The translations under genes were made by a program, and so were the position numbers. Shown here piece after piece: positions 33,444 through 64,000 of a stretch of DNA of 64,000 nt; positions within the stretch are counted from its first letter, which is position 1; the number at the start of each line of letters is the position of its first letter. Where the stretch lies: assembly GCF_016432865.1 (NCBI RefSeq), contig NC_067400.1:614730001-614794000 (forward strand), read 5' to 3'. The notes beneath the pieces were generated by a model. The model was not told the origin of the DNA. It saw only the letters and a program-made list of their open reading frames with translations, and made no database searches. This DNA comes from Antechinus flavipes. Lineage: Eukaryota.

Positions 33444-43328
<9,885 letters not shown>

Positions 43329-50784: not shown

Positions 50785-51966
50785 TCAGCAACGGGCCTGG
50801 AGGTTCTGCATGAGTTTCCAGAGGCGGATGGTGGTCTGGGGGTCGCGGGGCTGAGCCAGCACCAGGCGCCGGTGGACGCAGGGGTCCCCCTGCTTGTCTC
50901 TGTCCGGCCAGTTGGTGAGGAAGCCGGGGTGGTTCTGGGGGGCCAGGCCCAGCGCCTGGAAGCAGAGGCCGGAGTAGACGTCGTCGATGGGGAAGGGGAG
51001 CACCCTCTCGGCCGCCTTGAGCAGCCAGGGCGCCAGCTGCCCCGAGAAGACGTAGCCGCCGCCGCTGGCGTAGGCCGGGTAGGGGCCGGCGTAGAAGGAC
51101 TCGGGCACGTAGTAGGGCCCCCGGGGGGTCCGCACGGGCGCCGCCCGCTCGAAGACGTGGCCCAGGTAGAGGCCCCGGGCCGAGGCGGGCGGCAGCCCCC
51201 GGAGCAGCCCCAGCAGGGCCCGGACGTTGACGAAGCTGTCGTCCTCGGCGCGGAGCACGAAGGTCACCTGCGGGCAGTGGCGGCCCAGCCAGCGCAGGAA
51301 CAGCACATCCTTGAGGCTGCGGTTGAAGGGCACGTCCAGGAAGTCCCAGAGCAGGAGGTCCCGGTAGCGCCGGCTCTCCCACTGCACCAGGGGGCCCAGG
51401 TCGGGGCCCGGCTCCCCCCGGGGGGAGCCCAGCAGGAAGAGCAGGCGCACCCCGCGCTCGGGCCGCCCCCACGTCTCCCGGATGGCCTGGCGCTCCCCGA
51501 ATCTGCCCGCGGCCGACTTCACGGCCAGCAGCAGGTAGGGGGCCTCGGAGCCCCCGCAGCCCGGGACCCCCGCGCCCGACACCCAGCGGGGGTAGTCTCG
51601 GCAGGCGGCCGAGAGCAGGAAGCGCCGGTAAGCCTCGGGGTAGGAGGAGAAGTCGGGGATCTCGGCGGCCGCCGCCCTCCCCCAAGCGCGGCAGTCCCCT
51701 GCCGCAGAGCCGGCCGCCCCGGGCAGGGCCTGGAAGAGCTGCTGCTGCCGGTTCCAGTAGGCGGAGGCTCCGGGCCGGCCCAGGCGCTCCGAGAGGTTGG
51801 CAGGAAGCGAGGGCTCGAAGGGGCCGGGCTGGGCCGGGACCCCGGGCTCGGGCCCCTCCTGGTGCCTCCTGGGCCGCAGCGGCTCCGAGCTCCACTCGAT
51901 GTAAACCTTGAGGGCCAGCAGGGTGAGCCCGGCCAGGAGGCAGAGCAGGCACTTGGAGCAGCGCAT
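50785..51966 (-). CDS. B3GNT8: Beta-1,3-N-acetylglucosaminyltransferase 8 (GT31), single coding exon, 393 aa
   Basis: Type II TM N-terminus, LLLAVKS...RQAIRETWG, LLWDFLDVPFNRSLKD, EDDSFV, YPAYASGGGY, IDDVYSGLC. Probable upstream non-coding intron 51999-52151. Confidence 0.96.
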   Translation of the reverse strand: MRCSKCLLCLLAGLTLLALKVYIEWSSEPLRPRRHQEGPEPGVPAQPGPFEPSLPANLSERLGRPGASAYWNRQQQLFQALPGAAGSAAGDCRAWGRAAAAEIPDFSSYPEAYRRFLLSAACRDYPRWVSGAGVPGCGGSEAPYLLLAVKSAAGRFGERQAIRETWGRPERGVRLLFLLGSPRGEPGPDLGPLVQWESRRYRDLLLWDFLDVPFNRSLKDVLFLRWLGRHCPQVTFVLRAEDDSFVNVRALLGLLRGLPPASARGLYLGHVFERAAPVRTPRGPYYVPESFYAGPYPAYASGGGYVFSGQLAPWLLKAAERVLPFPIDDVYSGLCFQALGLAPQNHPGFLTNWPDRDKQGDPCVHRRLVLAQPRDPQTTIRLWKLMQNLQARC

Positions 51967-53130
51967 GGCCGGGCCCCCGGGGCCAGGGGGGCCCCGAGCT
52001 GCGAGGGAAAGGCGGGATCAGCGGCCGCCGCTCAGCCCGGAGGGGAGGGGCGCCCCCTCCCTCCCTCACCCCGCGCCTCCGCTCCCTCCCTAAGCCCAGG
52101 TGCCCTCTCCCCTCCCCTCCAGCCCGGGCATCCCGGTCCCCCGGCACTCACTGCTGGGCCGGGGCCTGGGCCCGGGCCGCCAGCCCCCTCAGGTCGGGCT
52201 CCTCCGGCAGCGGCCTCCCTCCCGGACTGAGTCAGTGTGGGGGGGAGGGGAGCCGAGAGCCCCCAGGGGCCAGGGAGCGGCAGGGGCGGGGCCGGGGAGG
52301 AGACCAGAGATACCGCCTGAGAGGCGGGAGCCCAGGGCGTGTTCGGGCGGGTTCTGGGGCCGGCCCAGGAGAGGGGCCCGGGAAATGGGGGGCCCCGGGG
52401 GTCGGCAGAGCCTGGACAGCGCCAGAGCCGGAGAGCCCGGGCCCGGAGGCTGAGGGGAGGGAGTGGGGCTCCGGGGAAGCGGCCGTCCCAGGGCATCCAC
52501 AAAAGGGGGGTCTAGTGACAAAGGGCTCCAGCGGGTCAGGAGGGGGTCTGCTCAGGGGGGAGGTGAAGAGGTGTTACAGGGGAGCGGGGGCTCCAGGGAA
52601 TAGTCCAGAAGGGGGGTCTGGTCAGAGGGGAGAGTGATAAAGGCAGGTAAGGGGGGGGGCAAGGAAGCTGGGAGCCAGGGGCAGAGGAGGGAAGCCCCTC
52701 GCCCCCACACCCAGGGGTGGGGAGGTAGGCCGCAGGATTGGGGGCTCTGCTCCCAAAGCTCCCAAATGAGAAGTGGATGGCAGCTTTCGCCCCCCCAGCC
52801 CCCTCCCCACCAGGTAGCCCCATCAGATACCTGGAGGCTCTGCCGGTCGGGGGCGCGTCTCGGGCCCCCTCTCCACAGCCCGCCCCTCTCTTTCTCCCTC
52901 CTGCAGGGACTAGGGAACTTCCAGCCCCCCGGGAAACCTGGGTGTTTGCATCAGTCGGCCCACTGGGGCCTCTGGGTACCAGCTTATCTCCTAACCGTCA
53001 ACAAACGCTTCCTCACTTCGGCTATAAAGAGGAAGGCATTTCTCTCCAGGGGAGGAGGGGGCCGGGCCCCGCCCCCGGACCCCCAATTCCTGCTGCCTCC
53101 TGACCCGCCCCACGGGACTTCATTTGTTGT

Positions 53131-53957: not shown

Positions 53958-54215
53958 GCCCGCTGCCATGTCCACTGTCACACCCACTGCTGCACCTGCT
54001 GCCGCTTCCACTGCTGTGCCCGCTGTCACGCCCGCTCCATGCCTGCTGCTGCACCTGCTGCCATGTCCACTGCCGTGCCCGCTGTCACGCCCGTTCCACA
54101 CCCGCTGCCGTGCCTGCTGCTGCATCTGCTGCCATGTCCACTGCCGTGCCCACTGTCACGCCCGCTCCACGCCCGCTGCCGTGCCCACTGCCTTACCCGC
54201 TGCCGTGCCCGCTGC
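53958..54215. repeat. GC-rich tandem repeat (about 12-bp core) spanning the DMAC2 stop codon and 3' UTR
   Basis: Block ctgccatgtccactg at 53963, 54058 and 54129, with gccgtgcccgct and gctgtcacgccc units. Confidence 0.85.
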
Positions 54216-57200
54216 CGCCTCCTCTTCCGCCGCCCCCTCGTCCTCAGAAAGCAGCTCCAGCCCGTCGGCATAGTCCGCCCCGACCACCTCACAATCGGGC
54301 AGCATCTCCTCCACCAGGATCTGGGTCAGGCCCTTGTTGGACACGGCCGGGAGGTTGGAGATGTCCAGGCGCCGCAGGCTCCTGGAGGAAGTTTGGGGAG
54401 GGCAGAGGTGGGCACACCGCGTGCCCGGGGGCCCCTGGGGGAAGCCGGGAGACCCGGGGGGGGTGGGCTGAGCTCTTACCGGAGGTGGTGGAGGCAGGCC
54501 AGGCCCCGCTCGGTGACCCTGGGGCAGCCAGCCAGCGAGAGCTCCTGCAGGCAGCTGCCCAGGGGGTGCAGGCAGCTCAGGCACCAGTCATCCACGTGGG
54601 GGCAGCCACACAGCCTCAGAGACCGCAGCCCGCTCAGCCGCACTGGCCGGAGAGGAGGAGGGGCGGATTAGGGCCGGCCTCCGGCCACAGTCAGCTCCCT
54701 CCCCAGCCTGGCCAGCCCCCTCACCCAGGTTCTTCAGCCCATAGTAGTTGATGATGCAGCCGCTGGCGTCCACCTCCTCCAGGGGCAGCTCCTCCAAGAG
54801 AGAGCAGTTCTGAAAGAATCTTTTCTTGTTTTGGGGCAGGATCCACTCCTGGTCCTGGAACCTGAGAGGTCAAAGCAGGCAAGTGTTCCCCCACCGACCG
54901 CAGCTCCCAGCCCCATTACCATGACCCAAAGGGCTCCCAGATCCCACGTCCTGAGCCCCCCATTAGGTGAGATGTTCTCTGGGAAGCACTGCCCCCCCAC
55001 AGCGGCGCCCGGTAAATGCTCAGGCCCCCATCAAACTCAAGCCTCCCTGAACCTCTCCTGGAGTCCCCAGATCCAAGTCGCCCCAAAGAGGACGCCCGGA
55101 TCTCTCCAGCTCTCACCTGACCGCTCCTCCTTGGTTCAGGATAAAGTTAGCCCCCGCCACGTCCGCGCTGTGGTATTTCAAGGTGTAGCTGAACACCCTG
55201 GGTTGAGAACGGGGTTTACTTCAGAGTGGGGAGGGGGAGGAAGGGGACAGCTAGCTCGACCACAGGCTCTAACACGTGATTGCTGAATGGGGGCTCCACT
55301 GCCATCCTCTAGTCCAGAAGTATTGGGGAAAGGTGGATCTTGGGGGGAACGCCCGGGATGGGGACCCCGTTGGAGGCAGCACAGTCTCCCCAAACGGGGA
55401 GGGGGCTCAGCCGTCTCCGGCTGACGGCCTGCGGCTCGGGTTCCTCGATGTGATCGGGCTGAGCGCGCTGCCCTCTCTGAAGAGGAAGGGACTGGACTCG
55501 GGCTCCTAAAGGCTTTTCCATCTCTGACACCCTGGCCCTCAGAAACCTGCACCAAGCACTCACTTGTTCATCTTATACAGGTTCCAGCTCCGGAAACGGG
55601 CAATCCAATCGCGTAACTGTTCCACGTCGTAGAATCGAGAAGCCATGGTGGCCAGCACGCCCCGCGGGCGGTCACGGCCAGGGCTCAGGTCATAGATGGG
55701 GTTAGGGCGGTAGCCAAAGTTACTCTGGTTGCTCAGGCTCCTGAGGGTCCCTCCTCCCGAGCACGTGGGAGGTCCAGCTCTGAGAAGCTACAAAGAAACA
55801 GACAAAAGAAGAGGAAGGGTGTAATGTCCCGGCCAGCTTTCTGGAGGGTCTTCGGACCCGCCCCGCTCTCAGCTGCATAATCCCCACGAGAATAGTCAGG
55901 GATAAAGTCCCAAGTCTTCATGGTCTCCTTCAGTCTCCCAGCCTGTCAGCAGCTCAGTCACCAGCCACTCAGCAGTCTGCACACCCAGATGGAATGGCCT
56001 GCTTTCCAGAGCCCCCGAGTTGGGGTGACAAAGCGTGTCATTGTGTTCTAGAGCCCCCACGCGGGGTGACTAAAATACAGTGTCCACACTGGCTCTCTGG
56101 AGGACCTCGGGACCAGCCCAAGTCCTCGGTCTTCGCGGAGAAGTGATAAAGGCAGAAGAGCCACCATGAGGCTGGTCAAGTCTTCTCCCCATGGCTGTCC
56201 CCAGTTTGCATACTCTATTACAATTCAATCAGTTAATCATACCGAGCATAAGCCAATCGTTGTATCGCTAGGGAACCATTATTTCTTGTAAGATTAAATC
56301 AATCCTACTGAACTAGGAACTAGTCAGCCCCGCACTAAACCAGATAGCCATTGTCTCATCAGTTCCACTGAGTTAGCACCTTGTAAGGATCTCCAGAGTT
56401 CTGGCCCATTACAGAACGGAGAGAGGGAAGGAAGAAAGGAGGGAGAGGGAAGGAGAGAGGGAGGGAGTGGGGAGGAGAAAGGGAGGGAGAGAAGGAAGGA
56501 AAGGGAGGGAAAGAGAGGGAGGAAAGGAGAGGAAGGGAGAGGCATTTAGGAAAGAGGGAGGAAGGGAAGAAGGGAGGAGAGGAGGGAGAGAAAAAAGGGT
56601 GGGAGGGAAAGAGAAAGGGGGAAGGAGGAAAGAGGGAAGGAGGGAGGTGACCCGCAGGCAGGGGGTCCCCCACCTCACTAAGGAACCTCAGATTTTCTGC
56701 TTTTTCCAGAATCACTAAAATTCCCCAATTCTTTTCAATTCCCAGATTTAAGTTTCAAACTATTCCCAGACCCCATATTTAGGACTCCCCAATTTCCCCT
56801 ATCCAATTCAGCTAGCTCCCTTCCCCTGGGCAGCCCCGCCCCTTTCTCAATCAAGCTCCGCCCCGGGTGTGTCCCGCCCTCCTGTCCAGGGGCATCTCCA
56901 GTTCCGCCCCTACACCAGCACTCTCACGCAAGCTCCGCCCCTTGGCTTGCCCACCCCGGTTGCTCCTCCCCTGAAGAGTCAGTCCCAGTTGCCTTGCCAA
57001 CTCGCCCGCCCCAATTTCACCCGGCACCTCAGCACACTTCATTCTCCATTGGCTGCTCGGCCCTCTCTCCTTATCCTCCCATTGGTCCTCAGTCGTGCTC
57101 TTGCCTATTCTTATTGGCCATCCCATCAGGTACCTCTGGCGACAGGCCTGCTGCAAAGGCCGATTTTCCCGGTCCCCCAGTGACCCTGGAGCTCGAACCC

Positions 57201-57620: not shown

Positions 57621-57833
57621 CTAATTCTGCATCTTTCCGAGGTCCTGCGCTCTCCTGCCGCCGCCCCCGGTTAGTCCTTCCTGGAGTCTGCCCTCCATCC
57701 CTCCTGCTGCTGGGGGCCGCGGCAGTCAGGGGCCAGCGGGTGCCCCGGCAGCAGGAGGGATTGTGGGAAGGCAGCAGGAGCCCGGGCCGGGCGGACTTTG
57801 GCCCCGTTGTCTGCGTGGCCCCGACAGCTCACG

Positions 57834-58682
57834 ATGGAGGCCTGGGGGCGGCTGGCCAGGGCCGGGCTGGTCCCGCTGGAGCTGGGACCCCCTCCCCGCG
57901 CCCTGCGAGACCCCAGCGGGACCTGGAGCCGTGAAGGGGCCGGAGCCGGGGCGCCCCGGGCGCAGGACCCCGTGGGCTGCGTGTGGGAGCAGTTGGTGAG
58001 ACAGAGAGAGATGGGGAGAGACAGAGATGGGAGAGAGAGACAAAGAGATGGGGAGAGACGGAGAGGTAGAGACAGAGATGGGGAGAGACAAAGAGATGGG
58101 AGAGACAGAGGAATGGGGGGGGGGGGGACAGAGGCCGATGGAGAAAGGGCAGGCGGCGGAAGCCAAGGCCGGAGGGAGCATCCGAGGGAGCATCCGAGGG
58201 AGCCGGGGGACGGCGGGGAGCTGAGCCGAGCCAGATACATGTGCGGCGGGGACCAGCCGGGCAGGGATGGAGGGGACTCTAACCACTGCCCCGCCCCCCA
58301 GTCTTTCTGTCCTAGATTGTCTTCGGGGAGTGACTGTGAGTTCCAAGAGCAGAGACAGCCCTTGGGGGGGACAAACTCCCCAGAGAGAGGGGAGGGGGAG
58401 GCGGAGGCTGAGAGGGAGCGGACGCTGGGTGCCGGGGCTTGCGGGACCGAGGCCGGGAATTGTGACCGCCCCTCCCCCTCTCCCCATCCCCCTCACCAGC
58501 CTTCTCCCCAACAGTGGAGCCTGCGGAGGATGGACCTACAACTGTTCAGTCAGCTGTGTGCCCTGGGCCTGGAGATCCAGGCCCTCCAGGAGGAGGCCGA
58601 GGCCGACTTGGATGAGGAAGAAGAAGGTCTGCGGACCTCCCCGACCGATTGGCTCATCCCAGACTTTGAAATCACTATCTGA
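57834..58682 (+). CDS. ERICH4: Glutamate-rich protein 4 (C19orf69), 2 exons, 109 aa
   Basis: Exons 57834-57995 (MEAWGRLARAGLVPLELGPPPRALR..VWEQL) and 58515-58682 (WSLRRMDLQLFSQLCALGLEI..PDFEITI*). Syntenic position. Confidence 0.9.
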   Translation: MEAWGRLARAGLVPLELGPPPRALRDPSGTWSREGAGAGAPRAQDPVGCVWEQLVRQREMGRDRDGRERQRDGERRRGRDRDGERQRDGRDRGMGGGGTEADGERAGGGSQGRREHPREHPREPGDGGELSRARYMCGGDQPGRDGGDSNHCPAPQSFCPRLSSGSDCEFQEQRQPLGGTNSPERGEGEAEAERERTLGAGACGTEAGNCDRPSPSPHPPHQPSPQQWSLRRMDLQLFSQLCALGLEIQALQEEAEADLDEEEEGLRTSPTDWLIPDFEITI

Positions 58683-58905
58683 GAGCCCAGCGCCGAGGAC
58701 GGCCGCCCCCCAGAGAGCCCCCCAGGGAGCCCCAGATGTAGCAGAGGCTTCCTCCGGGAAGGCTCTTGAACTTTGCCCTGTCGGGGACAGAGGGGCTGCC
58801 GTTTGATCGATGGGAGAATGCGATATCGATAATAATGATGGCGTGGAAATTTTCTAAGGAAAACAGATTTCGGGTTCAGATGTTTGCTTATTGTATGTAG
58901 ATATT

Positions 58906-58911
58906 AATAAA
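58906..58911 (+). terminator. ERICH4 polyA signal AATAAA
   Basis: In an AT-rich patch about 225 nt after the stop. Confidence 0.65.
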
Positions 58912-59402
58912 TGAGTCCCAGATTTTTAAAGATTCAGCTCATAGGATATGGAGCTTAAAGAAACTTTATGCATGATTTAGTCCGCTCCCTCAGTTTACAG
59001 ACAAACAGTCTGCAGAAGTAACTTGGCCAGGATCACCTGAGCTGGGGGTTCTCAGGGACAAGGTGACGCCATCTGCCGCTCTGCCCACTGAGCGCCTAGA
59101 AACCCCCCAGATCCAGCGACAATGTCTGCCCGTGAGCCGCGTCCGGGCAGCAGAGCGAGGGTCCCAGGCGAGGGTGGCAGTTCACGAGGTGGCGACAGCG
59201 AGGTGGGCAGCGGGGTGAGATGGGGACGGATTGTGGCCGGGAACATGGCGACTTTTGTGAGTGTGCGTTCGCCAGCGGGGTCCCGGGGGGGTGAGAAATG
59301 GGGGGGATGAGCCGCGGGACTTCCCCCAGCTCGGAGAGAAGAGGCACCAATGGCTCCACGAAGCTGAAGTCTCCTCTGTCGCCGGGCGGCCTGGGCCCTT
59401 GC

Positions 59403-62400
59403 TCAGGAGCTCCCCCCGAGGGCTTCTGCCTCCCGGAGCCAGACCTTGAGCTGCCGGGCGATCTTCTATCAGGGAGGAAGGGGAGGCCAGACCTGAGTTC
59501 CCAGCCCCCGCCCCCCTGCCTGCCCCTCTGACTTGGGGGGGCGGGGCCTGGGAGGGCCGGTCCCTGCTCACCTGGCGCCCCAGGCGGAGGCTGGGCGGGT
59601 CCGAGGGCCGGGCCGGGGCCATGTCTGAGCAGTGGGACGTGCCCCTCAGGAGCAGGGCCGGCTCGGAGGGCCGCGGGGCCCGGAGCACGCCCAGCACGTG
59701 CCAAGGGTCGATGTCACCTGGCGGCAGAGGGAGATGCTGAGGGGCCGCTTAGGGTGATCCCGGGAGCGAGGGTCTCCGGGGAGCCACGCACCCCTTACCG
59801 TTGACAAAGATCACACGGGTAGCCCCGGGGCTCTGGCCCCCGTAGTAGGTGTTGGTCCGGGCCACGGCTTCGGCCACGGAGGCCGGCGAGAGCCCGAACA
59901 CCCGGGCACACAGCTGGAGCTGGGCGGAGAGCGCGCTGCGCCTGGAGAAGGGGCAGCTGGGGTCCTGACAGGTGATATCTGATGGGGCAGAGGCGGGTCT
60001 CAGAGCCCCCACCAACGCTCACGGGCGGTAGGTTAGGCTCGGAGGTCCCTGCGGGGCACAGGTGGGCCTGTGCAGGGCGGAGACTCAGCCGAGGGGAGTC
60101 GGGACTGGGGCCCGAGCACTGAAGGGATGCTACAGAGGCAAATCTGGCCTGGGCCTGGGGGAGCAGAGCCGGCCAGGAGAGGGCCGAGTGGGGGGCTTGG
60201 GCTCTGGGCTGGAGGGTCTGCAGCGGGGCCCTTGGCGTGCTCCCCGGGGGTGGCCAGGGGCCCGAGCGCAGATGGGGGGCGGGAGCTTCCTGGGCCCGAG
60301 GCGGATGGAGGCGGGATTGGGTCTCGCCTGGACGCCCCGGGCTTCTCGGCCGGAGCAGGAGCGTCACTCACAGTATCCGAACTCTGTGCACGTCTGGTAG
60401 AACCACTGCCTGTCGCCGGGGCCCGTGGCCCGGGGCCTGGTGTCCCTCAGGGCGGCCACGGCAGCCGCCCTCGAGCTGGGCAGGCAGGGGAGGCCCAGGG
60501 CCTGCAGGACAAGCTACGGCAGAGAGATGGCGTCTCAGCGAGGGAGCCGGGGCCCCGAGGTCCAGGGCGGCGGGACCGGCCCTCACCTGGACGGCGTCCC
60601 GGAGCCCCGACAGGGGCCCCCCGCTCCGGTTGGCCAGGATGAGGTGGCAGAGGCCGCTCACGTCCAGGGGCGCTCCGACCTGCCGGTCGTACTGCACGGC
60701 CGCCCCCACCAGCCCCTCCAGCTGCTCCAGGAGCTCGGCCTGGTCCTCGGGGGCCTCCAGGGCTCCACAGGCCCTCACCGCTGCCCGCAGGGCCACCCGG
60801 GCCTCCTGGCCCTCGGACAGGCCACGGTCCAGCTCGGAGAAGGCCCGGGCCACGGCCCTCTGGCACTAGCGGGGGGAACTCGGTCACGACGCCCTCCTCC
60901 CTCCTCCCCGCGCCCGACGCCAGGCCCACCCGCCTTCCCCTCAGCTGCGGACGCCTGGGAACCAGGAGCCCCCAGGCCGGGCAGGACCTCGGGGCTTCCT
61001 GGTCTCCCTGCCCCCAACAGCCCGAAGGGGAGGCTTCGGCCAAAGCCACGCAGGTGATAAAGGGAGTCTGGGAAGCTGAACCCCCAGGTCTGGAGGAGGC
61101 AACGGAGCCCAGGGAAGGGGATCCTGCAGGAGGAGGCCAGAGCCGGGCCTTCCGGGCCCTTACTGAGCCACGGTCCCCTCGCCCTCCCTGGTCAGTCGCT
61201 GCTCCCCGAAGGGAGAGGACGGTGGGGATCAGAAGGGCCTCCCTTTGGGGGGACTGGCTCACCCCGGGGCCCTCCAGGTGTCCCCAGCAGGCTTTCAGCT
61301 CGTTCCCCCCCAGGACCACCCCGCCAGCTCCGGGGTAACCAGTCCCACCCCAAGGCCCCACATCCCCGCGGCCCAGAGAGTACCTTCGGGGATCCACCCA
61401 CTGCGGGGTCCGCCAGGCTCCTGGACACTCCCTGGGGGGGAAGGCAGGACTCCAGATCTGGCCCTCACCCGCCCCAGGCCCAGCGCCCGCTCGCAGGGGG
61501 GTCTCCTTACCCGGTTGTAGCTGGAGAAGTCCAGCTGGGCTTGCACGGGAGCCGAGGAGGCCACGGCTGCCCAGATGAGGTGGGGGAACTAGGAGGGGGA
61601 GACCGGCTCGTGAGGTCCAAGGGGGGCAGTCCTCCCCTCGGGCCTCCAGAGGGGGCCGGCCCGGCTGAGTTCTAGCCTCAGCCCCCGCCTCTCCCTCCCT
61701 TAACCCCCCAACGTGGGCTAGAGGGGGAGGATCCCGAACCTTCAGCCGGGCCCAGGCAGCCAAGGAGCCGGCGTAGGAGCCGCCAAAGCTGACCCAGGGA
61801 CTGGAGGCCGAGATGTTGTAGATCCGAGAGAGATGGACGCGGGCGGAGGCCACGTCGGCCAGGCTGGGGGGGAGGCAGAGGGAGAAGCGGGATGGAGAAG
61901 CGCCGCGGCGCCGCGGACGGCGCTCGGACCAATCTGCAGGCCCGAGGAGGACCGGGGCGCTCCACACCCCGGGGTCCTCCATATCTGGGGGGTCGTCCTC
62001 CACCCCATGGGAGGATCCTCCACACCCCGGGGGGGTGGTTTAGTTTCCTCCTCCATAAATTGAAGAGATTGCACTCCGTGGTCCCCGAGTTCTCCTGCTC
62101 TCAACCTATGACCTTATCATCCCTTGTCCCTGGGAGAAAGAGATGCAAAGAAACCTGGGGAGCTGAGAAGGGCAAATGCCCACCTAGGGGTCCGGCGCTT
62201 GGCGGTCCCTTCTCCCAGCCAGGAGGAAGTCCCAGGTGAATCAGGACTCCTTCGCCGAGGAAGGGGCAGCCCTACCCTGGGAAGGGGCCCCAGCCGGACC
62301 CTCAGAGGGAGGGAGAGACTCCTGGCTCCCCCTCGGCCCCCTCCCACCACCACTCACGCATGCCGGCTGGACAGGAAGCGCAGCTGTTCCAGGCCCAGTC

Positions 62401-63823
62401 CTCCTGGGGGGACGCTGTGGCCGTAAAACCGGTGCTCCAGAGATACCACCAGAGCCCCAAAGGGAGGGGCCAGGGTCCCGGGGTGACCTGAGGGAGGGAG
62501 CTGATGGAAGGGGCCACCCTGGGCTGATGCCCGTCCAGGCCTCTGGCCCAGCAGTTTGGGAGACCCTCCCCAGCCTGAGGGACCCCGGGATGGGGAGCTT
62601 CTCCCTGGTCCCGCAGCTCGAGGCCCCCTCTCCCAGCCTCGTCCCTTCTCAGGGCCCTCGGGCTCCTGTCTGCAGCCTTCCCTACCTTTAAGCACAGAGC
62701 TCGGCCCAAGGCTGCCTTCGCCCCCGATGTGCAGGAACACGGGGCCGTCCGGGGCCCTCCAGTGATCAGCATTCACCCAGTACCTCTGAGCAGGGCGGGA
62801 GGAAGGGAGACCACCACCCTCACTTCTCTGAGCCGCAGATCGCCTTCCTCAGGTCCCCCAGGCAGGAAGAAAGCCCCCAGGCTTACCTCAGGAAACGGGG
62901 ATGGCGCCAACGATGTCACTGATCCACCCTTGCACTAACCCCCCCCCATCACTCCTGATTCAACCACAGCCTCAAGCCCTGACCTCCCCTCTGCTCCTGG
63001 CCCTCGAGCTCCTGCTCCCCGAGGGTGACGGGGAGTCAGGGAACCCCAGCAGGGCCGCCCCCGGCTGCAGAAGGACAAGCCAGCCTGGGACGGCAGCGGG
63101 TCAGACCCTCAGCATATTTTATCCGAGAACAATTTGGGGACGTTCCCGAGTGGGGCTGGGCTACCCAGGATTTGTGCGGGGGGAAAACTTTGGGTGTTGG
63201 AGGTTAGACAGAAAACATGGGGTCCAGCAAGAAAGGTTGGGAGAGATTTCAGGGCCTCGGGCCCAGGATGAGTGTGGAGGGAACTTTTCCTGGGGAAAGG
63301 ATTTGTACCCCAGAATGTATCTGGGTACAGGCCCGGGCTGAGGCGAGGGACCCGGACTGAGGGGATGGGCCTGGGCTAAGGCGAGGGACCCGGACTGAGG
63401 AGACAGGCCCGGGCTGAGGCCACAGGCCTGGTCAGGGAGGGAAGCTGAATTCTGGGAAGGATTGTTCTGAGAGCAGATGAGGAAAGGTCCCTGGGGGGCT
63501 GGGGGACAGAGGCCCGGGGAGCTGACCTGCAGGAAGGAGCGTCGGTCCGAGCTGTTAAAGGGATCCAGGGGCTGCCAGAGCCAGCCCTCCCTCGCCGAAC
63601 TCGGCTCCCCCAGCTCAGCCTGCGCTTCTTGGACGTGCTCCCCAAACCGGCTCAAGAGGGAGCCTGGGAAGGAGCGAGAGGAAAGGCAGAGCTCAGCCTG
63701 GGAGACTCAGGGACCTCCCCCCGCCCCGGTCCTCGGCGAAGGGGGAGACACACCTGCAGCGGAGAGCCCCCAGAGGGACCCCAAGAGGAGCGGAGCCAGC
63801 AGGAGAGCGGCAGCAGGAGCCAT
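59403..63823 (-). CDS. PRSS16: Thymus-specific serine protease (peptidase S28), 12 exons, 498 aa
   Basis: Exons 63823-63754, 63663-63527, 62785-62686, 62487-62358, 61863-61740, 61588-61511, 61431-61384, 60865-60587, 60513-60372, 59978-59799, 59717-59572, 59465-59403; total 1497 nt, all GT-AG. Signal peptide, QPLDPFN..RYWVN, LEHRFYG, catalytic GGSYAG, QTCTEFG, GDIDPWH, SHC. Confidence 0.93.
63325..63425. repeat. About 39-bp tandem duplication (2.5 copies) in PRSS16 intron 2
   Basis: ggccyggGctRaggcgagggacccggactgagg repeated. Confidence 0.75.
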
Positions 63824-63872
63824 GGCTCAGATACCGGAGAGAGGGGACGATCTGGGAGCTCCCCTGAGGGCC

Positions 63873-63895
63873 CTTATAATACCCCCGCCCCCAGT
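63873..63895 (-). promoter_or_regulatory. PRSS16 TATA box with adjacent GC box
   Basis: Minus strand gggcgggggtattataaggg, about 50 nt upstream of the ATG. Confidence 0.6.
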
Positions 63896-64000
63896 CTGGA
63901 CATGCGTCTCTAGGAACAGCCCAAGCTCACCAGGAATGCCCCAAGCCCAGCGGGAGCCTGCCCAGACATCTGCAGCCCCCCCATTCCTTTCTCAGGTTAC

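What the first reader, a model, noticed from the sequence alone, without database searches (positions are those of the whole stretch)
59403..63895. Intact PRSS16 sits next to ERICH4/DMAC2, outside the MHC
Human PRSS16, the cortical thymic epithelial protease shaping the CD4 repertoire, lies in the extended MHC class I region on 6p22, while ERICH4 on 19q13.2 is followed by the CEACAM cluster. Here a 12-exon PRSS16 with an intact Ser/Asp/His triad and a TATA promoter directly follows ERICH4 in continuous, gap-free sequence. This implies MHC linkage is a eutherian-derived translocation or this is a marsupial relocation, and it marks a synteny breakpoint.
Basis: partly seen in the sequence, partly recalled or inferred. 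Interest (0 to 1): 0.7.

Follow-up and report, generated by a model that had tools for sequence, protein, structure and literature searches.

The report
PRSS16 at its ancestral, non-MHC locus
This is the intact thymus-protease gene PRSS16 of the yellow-footed antechinus, lying beside ERICH4/DMAC2 as it also does in opossum, possum and alligator and, less firmly, in frog, turtle, lizard and stingray, so its place next to the MHC in humans is a placental-mammal novelty, not an ancient linkage.

Summary
A 12-exon S28 serine-peptidase gene lies on the minus strand (ATG 63823, stop 59405-59403). All 11 introns are GT-AG, and Ser175, Asp433 and His458 are intact. The peptides of exons 1-11 are exact substrings of the RefSeq "thymus-specific serine protease" of Antechinus flavipes, and exon 12 matches it at 100%. 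The window is that genome. ERICH4 (plus strand, stop 58680-58682) converges on the gene tail to tail. DMAC2, B3GNT8, BCKDHA, EXOSC5, B9D2 and TGFB1 follow in the human 19q13.2 order, with no gap from 40026 to 64000.

The order CRX/OTX5 - PRSS16 - ERICH4 - DMAC2 - B3GNT8 recurs in independent assemblies of Monodelphis and Trichosurus. Alligator has OTX5 - PRSS16 - DMAC2 - B3GNT8 - BCKDHA - EXOSC5. A DMAC2-like gene follows PRSS16 on the same strand in a frog, turtle, lizard and stingray. The marsupial position is therefore ancestral, and the placental position in the histone cluster of the extended MHC is derived.

The gene and its neighbours are already in public annotation. I found no paper that states the evolutionary inference. 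It is a tidy, modestly interesting result. This scan had not noted it before.

The parts
59403..63823 (-). PRSS16 (thymus-specific serine protease) coding region: 12 exons, 498 codons plus stop
   Evidence: Exon model, phases and splice sites. Per-exon Pfam S28 hits. Peptides of exons 1-11 are exact substrings of RefSeq XP_051846829.1. Exon 12 is 100% identical.
63754..63823 (-). Exon 1: start codon and hydrophobic signal-peptide-like N-terminus
   Evidence: Read from the sequence. Exact match to P0148 residues 1-23.
61740..61863 (-). Exon 5: nucleophile motif GGSYAG, with the Ser175 codon at 61778-61776
   Evidence: Pfam S28 positions 93-133. Aligned to GGSYGG of PRCP 3N2Z and to the GGSY of dipeptidyl peptidase 2. 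Codon checked.
60587..60865 (-). Exon 8: variable helical insert, the most PRSS16-specific part of the protein
   Evidence: No Pfam or PDB match. In 1.84 billion representatives it hits only 12 proteins. All four full-size ones belong to TSSP (three named so; the fourth is 69% identical to cattle TSSP over 99%), and the rest are short unnamed fragments.
59572..59717 (-). Exon 11: Asp433 (59709-59707, in the motif DPW) and His458 (59634-59632, in the motif SHC)
   Evidence: Pfam S28 positions 385-432, E 2.3e-13. Aligned residue by residue to the Asp and His of dipeptidyl peptidase 2, 3JYH. Codons checked.
59403..59465 (-). Exon 12 and the TGA stop codon (59405-59403)
   Evidence: tblastn of P0148 residues 479-498 gives 100% identity. 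Stop codon checked.
63873..63881 (-). TATA element TATTATAAG, 50-58 nt upstream of the ATG
   Evidence: Read from the sequence. The core TTATAAGG is invariant in Antechinus, Trichosurus and Monodelphis. Promoter function is inferred.
63901..63935 (-). Promoter-proximal block conserved in marsupials, containing AGACGC (an ACGC core as in FOXN1 sites)
   Evidence: Invariant columns in the three-marsupial alignment. It does not align outside marsupials. The FOXN1 link is an idea drawn from knowledge of mouse Prss16 and was not tested.
57831..58682 (+). ERICH4 (DUF4530 family), convergent with PRSS16, with AATAAA at 58906
   Evidence: Pfam PF15039, E 1.6e-17. Reading frame and C-terminus. Poly(A) signal. 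The start coordinate is an estimate from the first Met in frame.
54159..55787 (-). DMAC2 (ATP5SL), an LRR protein
   Evidence: Exon-like open segments. The called product in the same genome, and in Monodelphis and Trichosurus, carries PF25372 LRR_FBXL15. Collinear tblastn hits in frog and alligator.
50788..52017 (-). B3GNT8, a single-exon ORF
   Evidence: Pfam Galactosyl_T, E 4.7e-29. 49% identical to the alligator gene at the syntenic place, E 1e-85.

Best explanation
The stretch is the single, functional PRSS16 (TSSP) gene of Antechinus flavipes. It encodes a secreted or endolysosomal S28 serine peptidase with a Ser175-Asp433-His458 triad. By analogy with mouse and human it would be made in cortical thymic epithelium, where it trims peptides for MHC class II and so shapes CD4 T-cell selection. 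That function is inferred and was not tested here.

Its place between CRX/OTX5 and ERICH4-DMAC2-B3GNT8-BCKDHA is the ancestral place of the gene. The whole block is shown back to the amniote ancestor. The PRSS16-DMAC2 adjacency goes back at least to the tetrapod ancestor, and probably to the jawed-vertebrate ancestor. Marsupials simply kept it.

In the stem of placental mammals the intron-containing gene was moved, or copied with loss of the source, into the histone cluster that flanks the MHC. The CRX-ERICH4 interval then became an evolutionary breakpoint, now bordered by CEACAM genes. MHC linkage of PRSS16 is therefore a placental acquisition.
For: Identity of the gene:
- Per-exon Pfam S28 hits are collinear along the profile.
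- The peptides of exons 1-11 are exact substrings of the RefSeq TSSP of A. flavipes, and exon 12 is 100% identical.
- Exon 8 finds only TSSP-like proteins among 1.84 billion representatives.
- TSSP orthologues outside marsupials score 474-697 bits. The human paralogues score far lower: dipeptidyl peptidase 2 gives 155 bits and PRCP 134 bits.
- A maximum-likelihood tree of 26 TSSPs follows the species tree. Marsupial, eutherian and therian clades each have 99-100% support.
- dN/dS is 0.18 against Trichosurus and 0.23 against Monodelphis, summed exon by exon.

Position of the gene:
- Monodelphis and Trichosurus have OTX-like - PRSS16 - DUF4530 - LRR_FBXL15 - Galactosyl_T, with the same strands. 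Monodelphis then shows E1_dh.
- Alligator has OTX5 - PRSS16 - DMAC2 - B3GNT8 - BCKDHA - EXOSC5. tblastn from the window confirms this. The OTX gene is named otx5/cone-rod homeobox.
- In the frog Spea, PRSS16 is followed by DMAC2.
- In a turtle, a lizard and a stingray, PRSS16 is followed on the same strand by a 266-276 aa LRR_FBXL15 protein. One exon is confirmed for the turtle.

Placental mammals:
- Elephant and cattle have no DMAC2, ERICH4 or B3GNT8 within 10 kb of PRSS16.
- A sheep-hybrid assembly has a histone gene pair about 35-40 kb upstream of PRSS16.
- Human PRSS16 is listed as an extended class I gene (PMC1309616).
- Gene lists put ERICH4 next to CEACAM1 in cattle and in the same interval as CEACAM21 in human (PMC9172108, PMC10100507).
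- The cattle and elephant genes keep their introns, so the move was at DNA level.
- Earlier notes place this genome's MHC on another piece (I did not check this).
Against: - Thymic expression and enzyme activity were not tested.
Orthology rests on score gaps, names, the orthologue-only tree and synteny.
- For the lizard and the stingray, the identity of the downstream gene as DMAC2 rests only on a precomputed Pfam hit and on its size.
- Flanks were limited to 10 kb, so the placental neighbourhood is only partly seen.
- The echidna CRX flank (10 kb) shows no PRSS16, and no monotreme TSSP was among the top 120 hits. The state in monotremes is therefore unknown, and the move can only be dated to after the marsupial-placental split by parsimony.
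- L001 is the same assembly as the window and is not independent evidence.
Confidence: 0.88

Rival explanations
1. Duplication with reciprocal loss. A second copy of PRSS16 arose in the therian stem at the histone-cluster site. Placentals later lost the 19q-type copy and marsupials lost the MHC-side copy, so the two lineages carry old paralogues rather than one relocated gene.
For: Nothing positive. The orthologue tree cannot tell a duplication just before the marsupial-placental split from a simple move. The eutherian stem branch is about twice the marsupial one (0.37 against 0.19), as might follow a copy escaping constraint.
Against: No marsupial, reptile, amphibian or fish shows two TSSP clusters among the listed hits. 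The explanation needs two losses instead of one move. Outgroups have only the DMAC2-linked position.
Confidence: 0.08
2. Marsupial-specific relocation. PRSS16 was MHC-linked in the therian ancestor and moved next to ERICH4 in marsupials.
For: The placental position was described first, and antigen-processing genes do cluster in the MHC.
Against: Alligator, frog, turtle, lizard and stingray have PRSS16 next to DMAC2 or a DMAC2-like gene. Alligator also shares OTX5 upstream and B3GNT8-BCKDHA-EXOSC5 downstream.
Confidence: 0.02
3. Assembly artefact. The ERICH4-PRSS16 join is a chimeric contig.
For: The region is very GC-rich (64-72%), and the window has four gaps elsewhere.
Against: There is no N between 40026 and 64000. 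The same order and strands occur in independent assemblies of Monodelphis (GCA_027887165.1), Trichosurus (GCA_011100635.1) and alligator.
Confidence: 0.01
4. The gene is another S28 paralogue (PRCP or DPP7) or a decaying copy, not a working PRSS16.
For: S28 members share the fold and the triad motifs.
Against: TSSP orthologues score 474-697 bits, against 134-155 bits for PRCP and dipeptidyl peptidase 2. All sources name it TSSP. The open frame is intact, the splice sites are canonical, the triad is present and dN/dS is about 0.2.
Confidence: 0.01

Closest known systems
Placental PRSS16 / TSSP (human 6p22.1, mouse chromosome 13; cattle and elephant proteins P0009 and P0095 used here)
   Same: It is a 1:1 orthologue, 61-65% identical over 93-100% of the length. 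It shares the S28 domain, the triad motifs, a similar length (498 aa against 505-516) and a multi-exon gene of 4-8 kb.
   Different: The genomic place differs. Here the gene lies between CRX/OTX5 and ERICH4-DMAC2, and the 54 kb of the window on the ERICH4 side hold no histone, zinc-finger or MHC-region genes. In placentals it lies beside the histone cluster of the extended MHC class I region. The promoter does not align with the placental ones.
Non-mammalian PRSS16 (alligator, turtles, lizard, frogs, gar, stingray)
   Same: They are orthologues, 47-52% identical. They share the same downstream neighbour and strand arrangement. Alligator has the whole block OTX5-PRSS16-DMAC2-B3GNT8-BCKDHA-EXOSC5.
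   Different: In alligator no ERICH4 fits in the 440-bp gap between PRSS16 and DMAC2. In the turtle and the lizard only an unannotated ERICH4-like open frame is seen there.
DPP7 (dipeptidyl peptidase 2; PDB 3JYH, 3N0T, 4EBB)
   Same: It has the same S28 fold family and aligns end to end (query 48-491). The Ser, Asp and His positions match.
   Different: It is a paralogue, scoring only 155 bits, with a different insert region. Exon 8 has no match to it.
PRCP (lysosomal Pro-X carboxypeptidase; PDB 3N2Z)
   Same: It belongs to the S28 family and shares the GGSYxG nucleophile motif.
   Different: It is a paralogue scoring 134 bits. With exon 11 alone it is not detected.

Membership tests
Peptidase family S28 (Pfam PF05577) | Sequence match to the S28 domain over its whole length | tested here: met
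   Exons 3, 4, 5, 6, 9, 10 and 11 hit PF05577 in order, covering profile positions 17-432 of 434. Six of the seven are above the 25-bit cut-off on their own. The RefSeq product aligns over residues 48-491 to dipeptidyl peptidase 2.
Peptidase family S28 (Pfam PF05577) | Catalytic Ser-Asp-His triad, with Ser in GGSYxG, Asp in DPW and a downstream His | tested here: met
   Ser175, Asp433 and His458 are present as codons. Asp and His pair residue by residue with chain positions 395 and 420 of 3JYH. Ser lies in the aligned GGSY motif of 3JYH and 3N2Z. That these chain positions are the catalytic residues is taken from knowledge of DPP7.
PRSS16 / TSSP orthologue group | Closer to PRSS16 of other vertebrates than to PRCP or DPP7 | tested here: met
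   The top 120 hits are, wherever they carry an informative name, TSSP or serine protease 16, down to frog, gar and stingray at 474 bits. PRCP and dipeptidyl peptidase 2 score 134-155 bits. Exon 8 hits only TSSP. A tree including the paralogues was not built.
PRSS16 / TSSP orthologue group | Gene tree follows the species tree (single-copy orthology) | tested here: met
   Marsupial, eutherian and therian clades have 99-100% support, with sauropsids, frogs and fishes outside them.
PRSS16 / TSSP orthologue group | Gene under purifying selection with an intact frame | tested here: met
   There are 498 codons with no internal stop and GT-AG introns. dN/dS is 0.18 and 0.23 against two other marsupial orders.
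PRSS16 / TSSP orthologue group | Expression in cortical thymic epithelium and a role in CD4 selection | not testable with these tools
   No expression data are available here. The only hint is a TATA box and an upstream block with an ACGC core that are conserved among marsupials.
Extended MHC class I region gene set | Physical linkage to the MHC or the major histone cluster | tested here: not met
   The window is the TGFB1-B9D2-EXOSC5-BCKDHA-B3GNT8-DMAC2-ERICH4 block, with CRX/OTX5 on the other side. Earlier notes place this genome's MHC on another piece (I did not check this).

The most novel reading that the evidence does not exclude
One rearrangement in the placental stem broke the ancient CRX-PRSS16-ERICH4 interval. 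It carried PRSS16 into the histone cluster beside the MHC. It left CRX about 6 Mb from ERICH4 on the same chromosome arm; the strands fit an inversion with one breakpoint in this interval. It also opened the site where the CEACAM family later expanded. The relocated gene then evolved faster: the eutherian stem branch is 0.37 against 0.19 for marsupials. This could reflect new regulation in an MHC-linked chromatin domain. Separately, monotremes and birds may lack PRSS16 altogether.
Probability: 0.25. Interest if true: 0.5.

Novelty: already known. Interest (0 to 1): 0.35.

Why it matters
PRSS16 is often cited as an antigen-processing gene that sits in the extended MHC. Its human disease associations are hard to separate from HLA linkage.

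The evidence here shows that this linkage is confined to placental mammals. The gene has sat next to DMAC2 at least since the tetrapod ancestor, and probably since the jawed-vertebrate ancestor. This removes PRSS16 from arguments for an ancient functional clustering of antigen-processing genes with the MHC. It also dates the linkage to the placental stem.

Marsupials thus offer a natural system in which PRSS16 variation is unlinked from MHC haplotypes. The CRX-ERICH4 interval is pinpointed as an evolutionary breakpoint.

The gene and its neighbours are already in RefSeq and Ensembl annotation. Only the polarity of the change and its depth seem not to have been written up: six literature searches found nothing.

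Tried and rejected
- **Exon 8 alone.** It gave no Pfam S28 hit and no meaningful PDB hit. It is the variable insert, so this is not evidence against S28 membership.
- **Promoter alignment beyond marsupials.** Cattle, elephant, alligator and turtle could not be aligned with the marsupial promoter, so nothing can be said about whether the promoter moved with the gene.
- **Histone genes near placental PRSS16.** ORFs within 10 kb of PRSS16 in elephant and cattle gave no histone hit. The only hit was a dUTPase-like ORF, probably from a retroelement. Only the sheep-hybrid locus reached a histone pair.
- **tblastx of the alligator DMAC2 region** against the turtle, lizard and stingray flanks was swamped by GC-rich noise. 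Only one frog-turtle exon match was usable.
- **Pfam DUF4530 on the reptile ERICH4-like frames** gave no hit. That homology rests on pairwise BLASTP and on position.
- **Echidna CRX flank.** It holds no PRSS16, DMAC2, ERICH4 or B3GNT8 within 10 kb. This is inconclusive.
- **One literature search was badly framed** and returned only general marsupial papers.
- **The spliced protein was not joined** from the window's exons. Every search of the window's gene was done exon by exon, by reference. Whole-protein steps (PDB search, tree) used P0148, the RefSeq product returned by a tool.
- **No human contig was fetched.** Human protein rows that appeared in hit lists were not used. No N stretch was filled.
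Full report
**What is in the sequence**

The minus strand between 63823 and 59403 carries a 12-exon gene. The exons are E1 63823-63754, E2 63663-63527, E3 62785-62686, E4 62487-62358, E5 61863-61740, E6 61588-61511, E7 61431-61384, E8 60865-60587, E9 60513-60372, E10 59978-59799, E11 59717-59572 and E12 59465-59403. They total 1497 nt, which is 498 codons plus TGA. I first set the E12 start two bases too far upstream and corrected it from the tblastn result. The first ten introns showed GT..AG. The last acceptor (…gatag|AAG) can be read.

Seven exons hit Pfam Peptidase_S28 in strict order along the profile, at positions 17-47, 53-91, 93-133, 134-158, 296-320, 323-383 and 385-432 of 434. Exon 8 is the variable insert and hits nothing in Pfam or the PDB.

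**Identity of the gene**

Exon 8 alone was scored against 1.84 billion representative proteins. It found 12 proteins. All four full-size ones belong to thymus-specific serine protease (three are named so; the fourth is 69% identical to cattle TSSP over 99% of its length), and the rest are short unnamed fragments.

A cattle TSSP used as query then returned the marsupial TSSPs. One of them is P0148, which is XP_051846829.1 of Antechinus flavipes. The in-frame peptides of exons 1-11 are exact substrings of P0148, and exon 12 is 100% identical.

ERICH4, DMAC2 and B3GNT8 of the window are 100% identical to the A. flavipes assembly locus L001. For this reason L001 is not independent evidence. It only extends the view 10 kb beyond the window's end.

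I used P0148 for whole-protein steps because a tool returned it:
- TSSP orthologues outside marsupials score 474-697 bits.
- The solved human paralogues score 155 bits (dipeptidyl peptidase 2) and 134 bits (PRCP).
- A maximum-likelihood tree of 26 TSSPs gives marsupial, eutherian and therian clades with 99-100% support. Sauropsids, frogs, gar and stingray fall outside these clades.

**Is the gene intact?**

Ser175 (TCC, 61778-61776) lies in GGSYAG. Asp433 (GAC, 59709-59707) lies in DPW. His458 (CAC, 59634-59632) lies in SHC. Asp and His pair residue by residue with chain positions 395 and 420 of 3JYH. Ser lies in the aligned GGSY motif of 3JYH and 3N2Z. That those chain positions are the catalytic residues of DPP7 is taken from established knowledge of that enzyme.

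I counted Nei-Gojobori differences exon by exon and summed them. This gave dN/dS of 0.18 against Trichosurus and 0.23 against Monodelphis, over 467-468 codons. That indicates clear purifying selection.

The TATA element TATTATAAG (63881-63873) lies 50-58 nt upstream of the ATG. Its core TTATAAGG is invariant in three marsupial orders. A further conserved block just upstream contains AGACGC. Any link of that block to FOXN1, which controls mouse Prss16, is only an idea. The block cannot be aligned outside marsupials.

**Neighbours in the window**

Open segments and Pfam hits place these genes:
- TGFB1 (minus strand, 3.3-6.5 kb)
- B9D2 (minus, about 9.1-9.4 kb)
- EXOSC5 (minus, 37.5-41.4 kb)
- BCKDHA (plus, 46.3-49.3 kb)
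- B3GNT8 (minus, 50788-52017)
- DMAC2 (minus, 54.2-55.8 kb)
- ERICH4 (plus, stop 58680-58682; DUF4530, E 1.6e-17)

This is the order and strand pattern of human 19q13.2, from my own knowledge and from the gene lists in PMC10100507 and PMC9172108.

ERICH4 and PRSS16 converge tail to tail, with 720 bp between their stop codons. ERICH4 has AATAAA at 58906. PRSS16 has only a weak CATAAA, at 58970-58965 on its own strand. The window's N runs all lie below 40026, so the join is gap-free.

**Polarity of the change**

The gene orders found are:
- **Monodelphis domestica** (Didelphimorphia): OTX-type homeobox - PRSS16 - DUF4530 (opposite strand) - LRR_FBXL15 - Galactosyl_T - E1_dh.
- **Trichosurus vulpecula** (Diprotodontia): the same order as far as Galactosyl_T, where the locus ends.
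- **Alligator mississippiensis**: OTX-type homeobox - PRSS16 - a 244-aa gene - a 389-aa gene - E1_dh - RNase_PH.
- **Spea bombifrons** (frog): PRSS16 followed 1.7 kb downstream by a gene whose four exons match DMAC2 collinearly (42-61% identity).
- **Turtle, lizard and stingray**: PRSS16 followed on the same strand by a 266-276 aa LRR_FBXL15 protein.

The two marsupial loci come from independent assemblies. With Antechinus they span the marsupial crown group.

In alligator, tblastn from the window shows that the 244-aa and 389-aa genes are DMAC2 (65% identity in the best exon) and B3GNT8 (49%, E 1e-85). BCKDHA (72-83%) and EXOSC5 follow.

The last exon of the upstream homeobox gene retrieves marsupial "otx5-like / cone-rod homeobox", monotreme CRX and fish, frog and alligator OTX5. 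The alligator hit has the same length (290 aa) and lies on the same contig as the gene in L007.

For the turtle, one DMAC2 exon is detectable within the part of the gene that was fetched. For the lizard and the stingray, the identification rests on the precomputed Pfam hit and on size.

The block CRX/OTX5 - PRSS16 - DMAC2 - B3GNT8 - BCKDHA is therefore ancestral for amniotes. The PRSS16-DMAC2 adjacency is shown back to the tetrapod ancestor. It probably dates to the ancestor of jawed vertebrates.

**Placental mammals**

Elephant and cattle PRSS16 have no called neighbour within 10 kb. There is no trace of DMAC2, ERICH4 or B3GNT8 there either. A merged gene model in a sheep-hybrid assembly shows a divergent histone pair about 35-40 kb upstream of the PRSS16 exons.

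The zebrafish MHC survey lists human PRSS16 among extended class I genes. The opossum MHC paper reports that the histone cluster is absent from the opossum MHC scaffold. Positional gene lists put ERICH4 next to CEACAM1 in cattle and in one interval with CEACAM21 in human.

The cattle and elephant genes are still split into exons, so the move was at DNA level and not by retroposition.

From my own knowledge, not tested here, human CRX lies about 6 Mb distal to ERICH4 on 19q13, on the opposite relative strand. This would fit an inversion with one breakpoint in the CRX-ERICH4 interval.

**Verdict**

The marsupial-relocation, misassembly and wrong-paralogue readings are refuted. Reciprocal loss after a duplication in the therian stem cannot be excluded, but it has no positive support.

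The gene and its neighbourhood are already annotated in public records. Six literature searches found no paper that states the polarity or the depth of the linkage.

No human contig was fetched. Human protein rows in hit lists were not used. No N stretch was filled.

Noticed in passing
L004:23983-24180 (-) and L003:19244-19666 (-): Lizard and turtle have unannotated open frames between PRSS16 and the DMAC2-like gene, on the opposite strand, exactly where marsupial ERICH4 lies. The lizard frame is 60% identical over 25 aa to the antechinus ERICH4 C-terminus (E 6e-7, single comparison). The two reptile frames are 59% identical over 37 aa (E 1e-11). Pfam DUF4530 does not detect them. ERICH4 may therefore predate mammals.
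   Followed up: partly
L007:15258-15697: In alligator only 440 bp separate PRSS16 from DMAC2. No ERICH4 fits there, which suggests loss in that lineage, or at least absence.
   Followed up: partly
L012 (echidna CRX locus) and the hit list: No monotreme or bird TSSP appears among the 120 best hits, although frog, gar and stingray do. The 10 kb downstream of echidna CRX hold no PRSS16, DMAC2, ERICH4 or B3GNT8. A 2010 degradome paper (PMC2865498) lists PRSS16 as absent from chicken and zebra finch. This may be true loss, or the gene may be hidden in GC-rich sequence. It is unresolved.
   Followed up: partly
Tree: In the PRSS16 tree the eutherian stem branch (0.37) is about twice the marsupial stem branch (0.19). 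Faster change after the relocation is possible, but it was not tested with a rate or selection model.
   Followed up: no
window 57675-58679 (+): The ERICH4 frame stays open for 335 codons, from upstream of exon 1 to the stop. It runs through what the same-genome annotation treats as an intron (a 114-aa product). The intervening part encodes an Arg/Asp/Glu/Gly-rich repeat.
   Followed up: no
window 17.5-21.5 kb, 23.5-25.6 kb and 34.0-37.6 kb: Three long, strongly skewed tandem-repeat arrays lie between B9D2 and EXOSC5. GC falls to 31-41% and GC skew reaches +0.99 and -0.72. Assembly gaps lie inside or near them (17278-17545, 19077-19210, 39107-39257, 39893-40025). TMEM91, expected in this interval, was not looked for.
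   Followed up: no
window 58887-58970: The 3' ends of ERICH4 (AATAAA at 58906, plus strand) and PRSS16 (only a weak CATAAA at 58970-58965, minus strand) would lie within about 60 bp of each other. The two transcripts may abut or overlap.
   Followed up: no
L008:23162-23890 (-): A 243-aa ORF with a dUTPase domain lies about 5 kb downstream of elephant PRSS16. It is probably a retroviral remnant.
   Followed up: no
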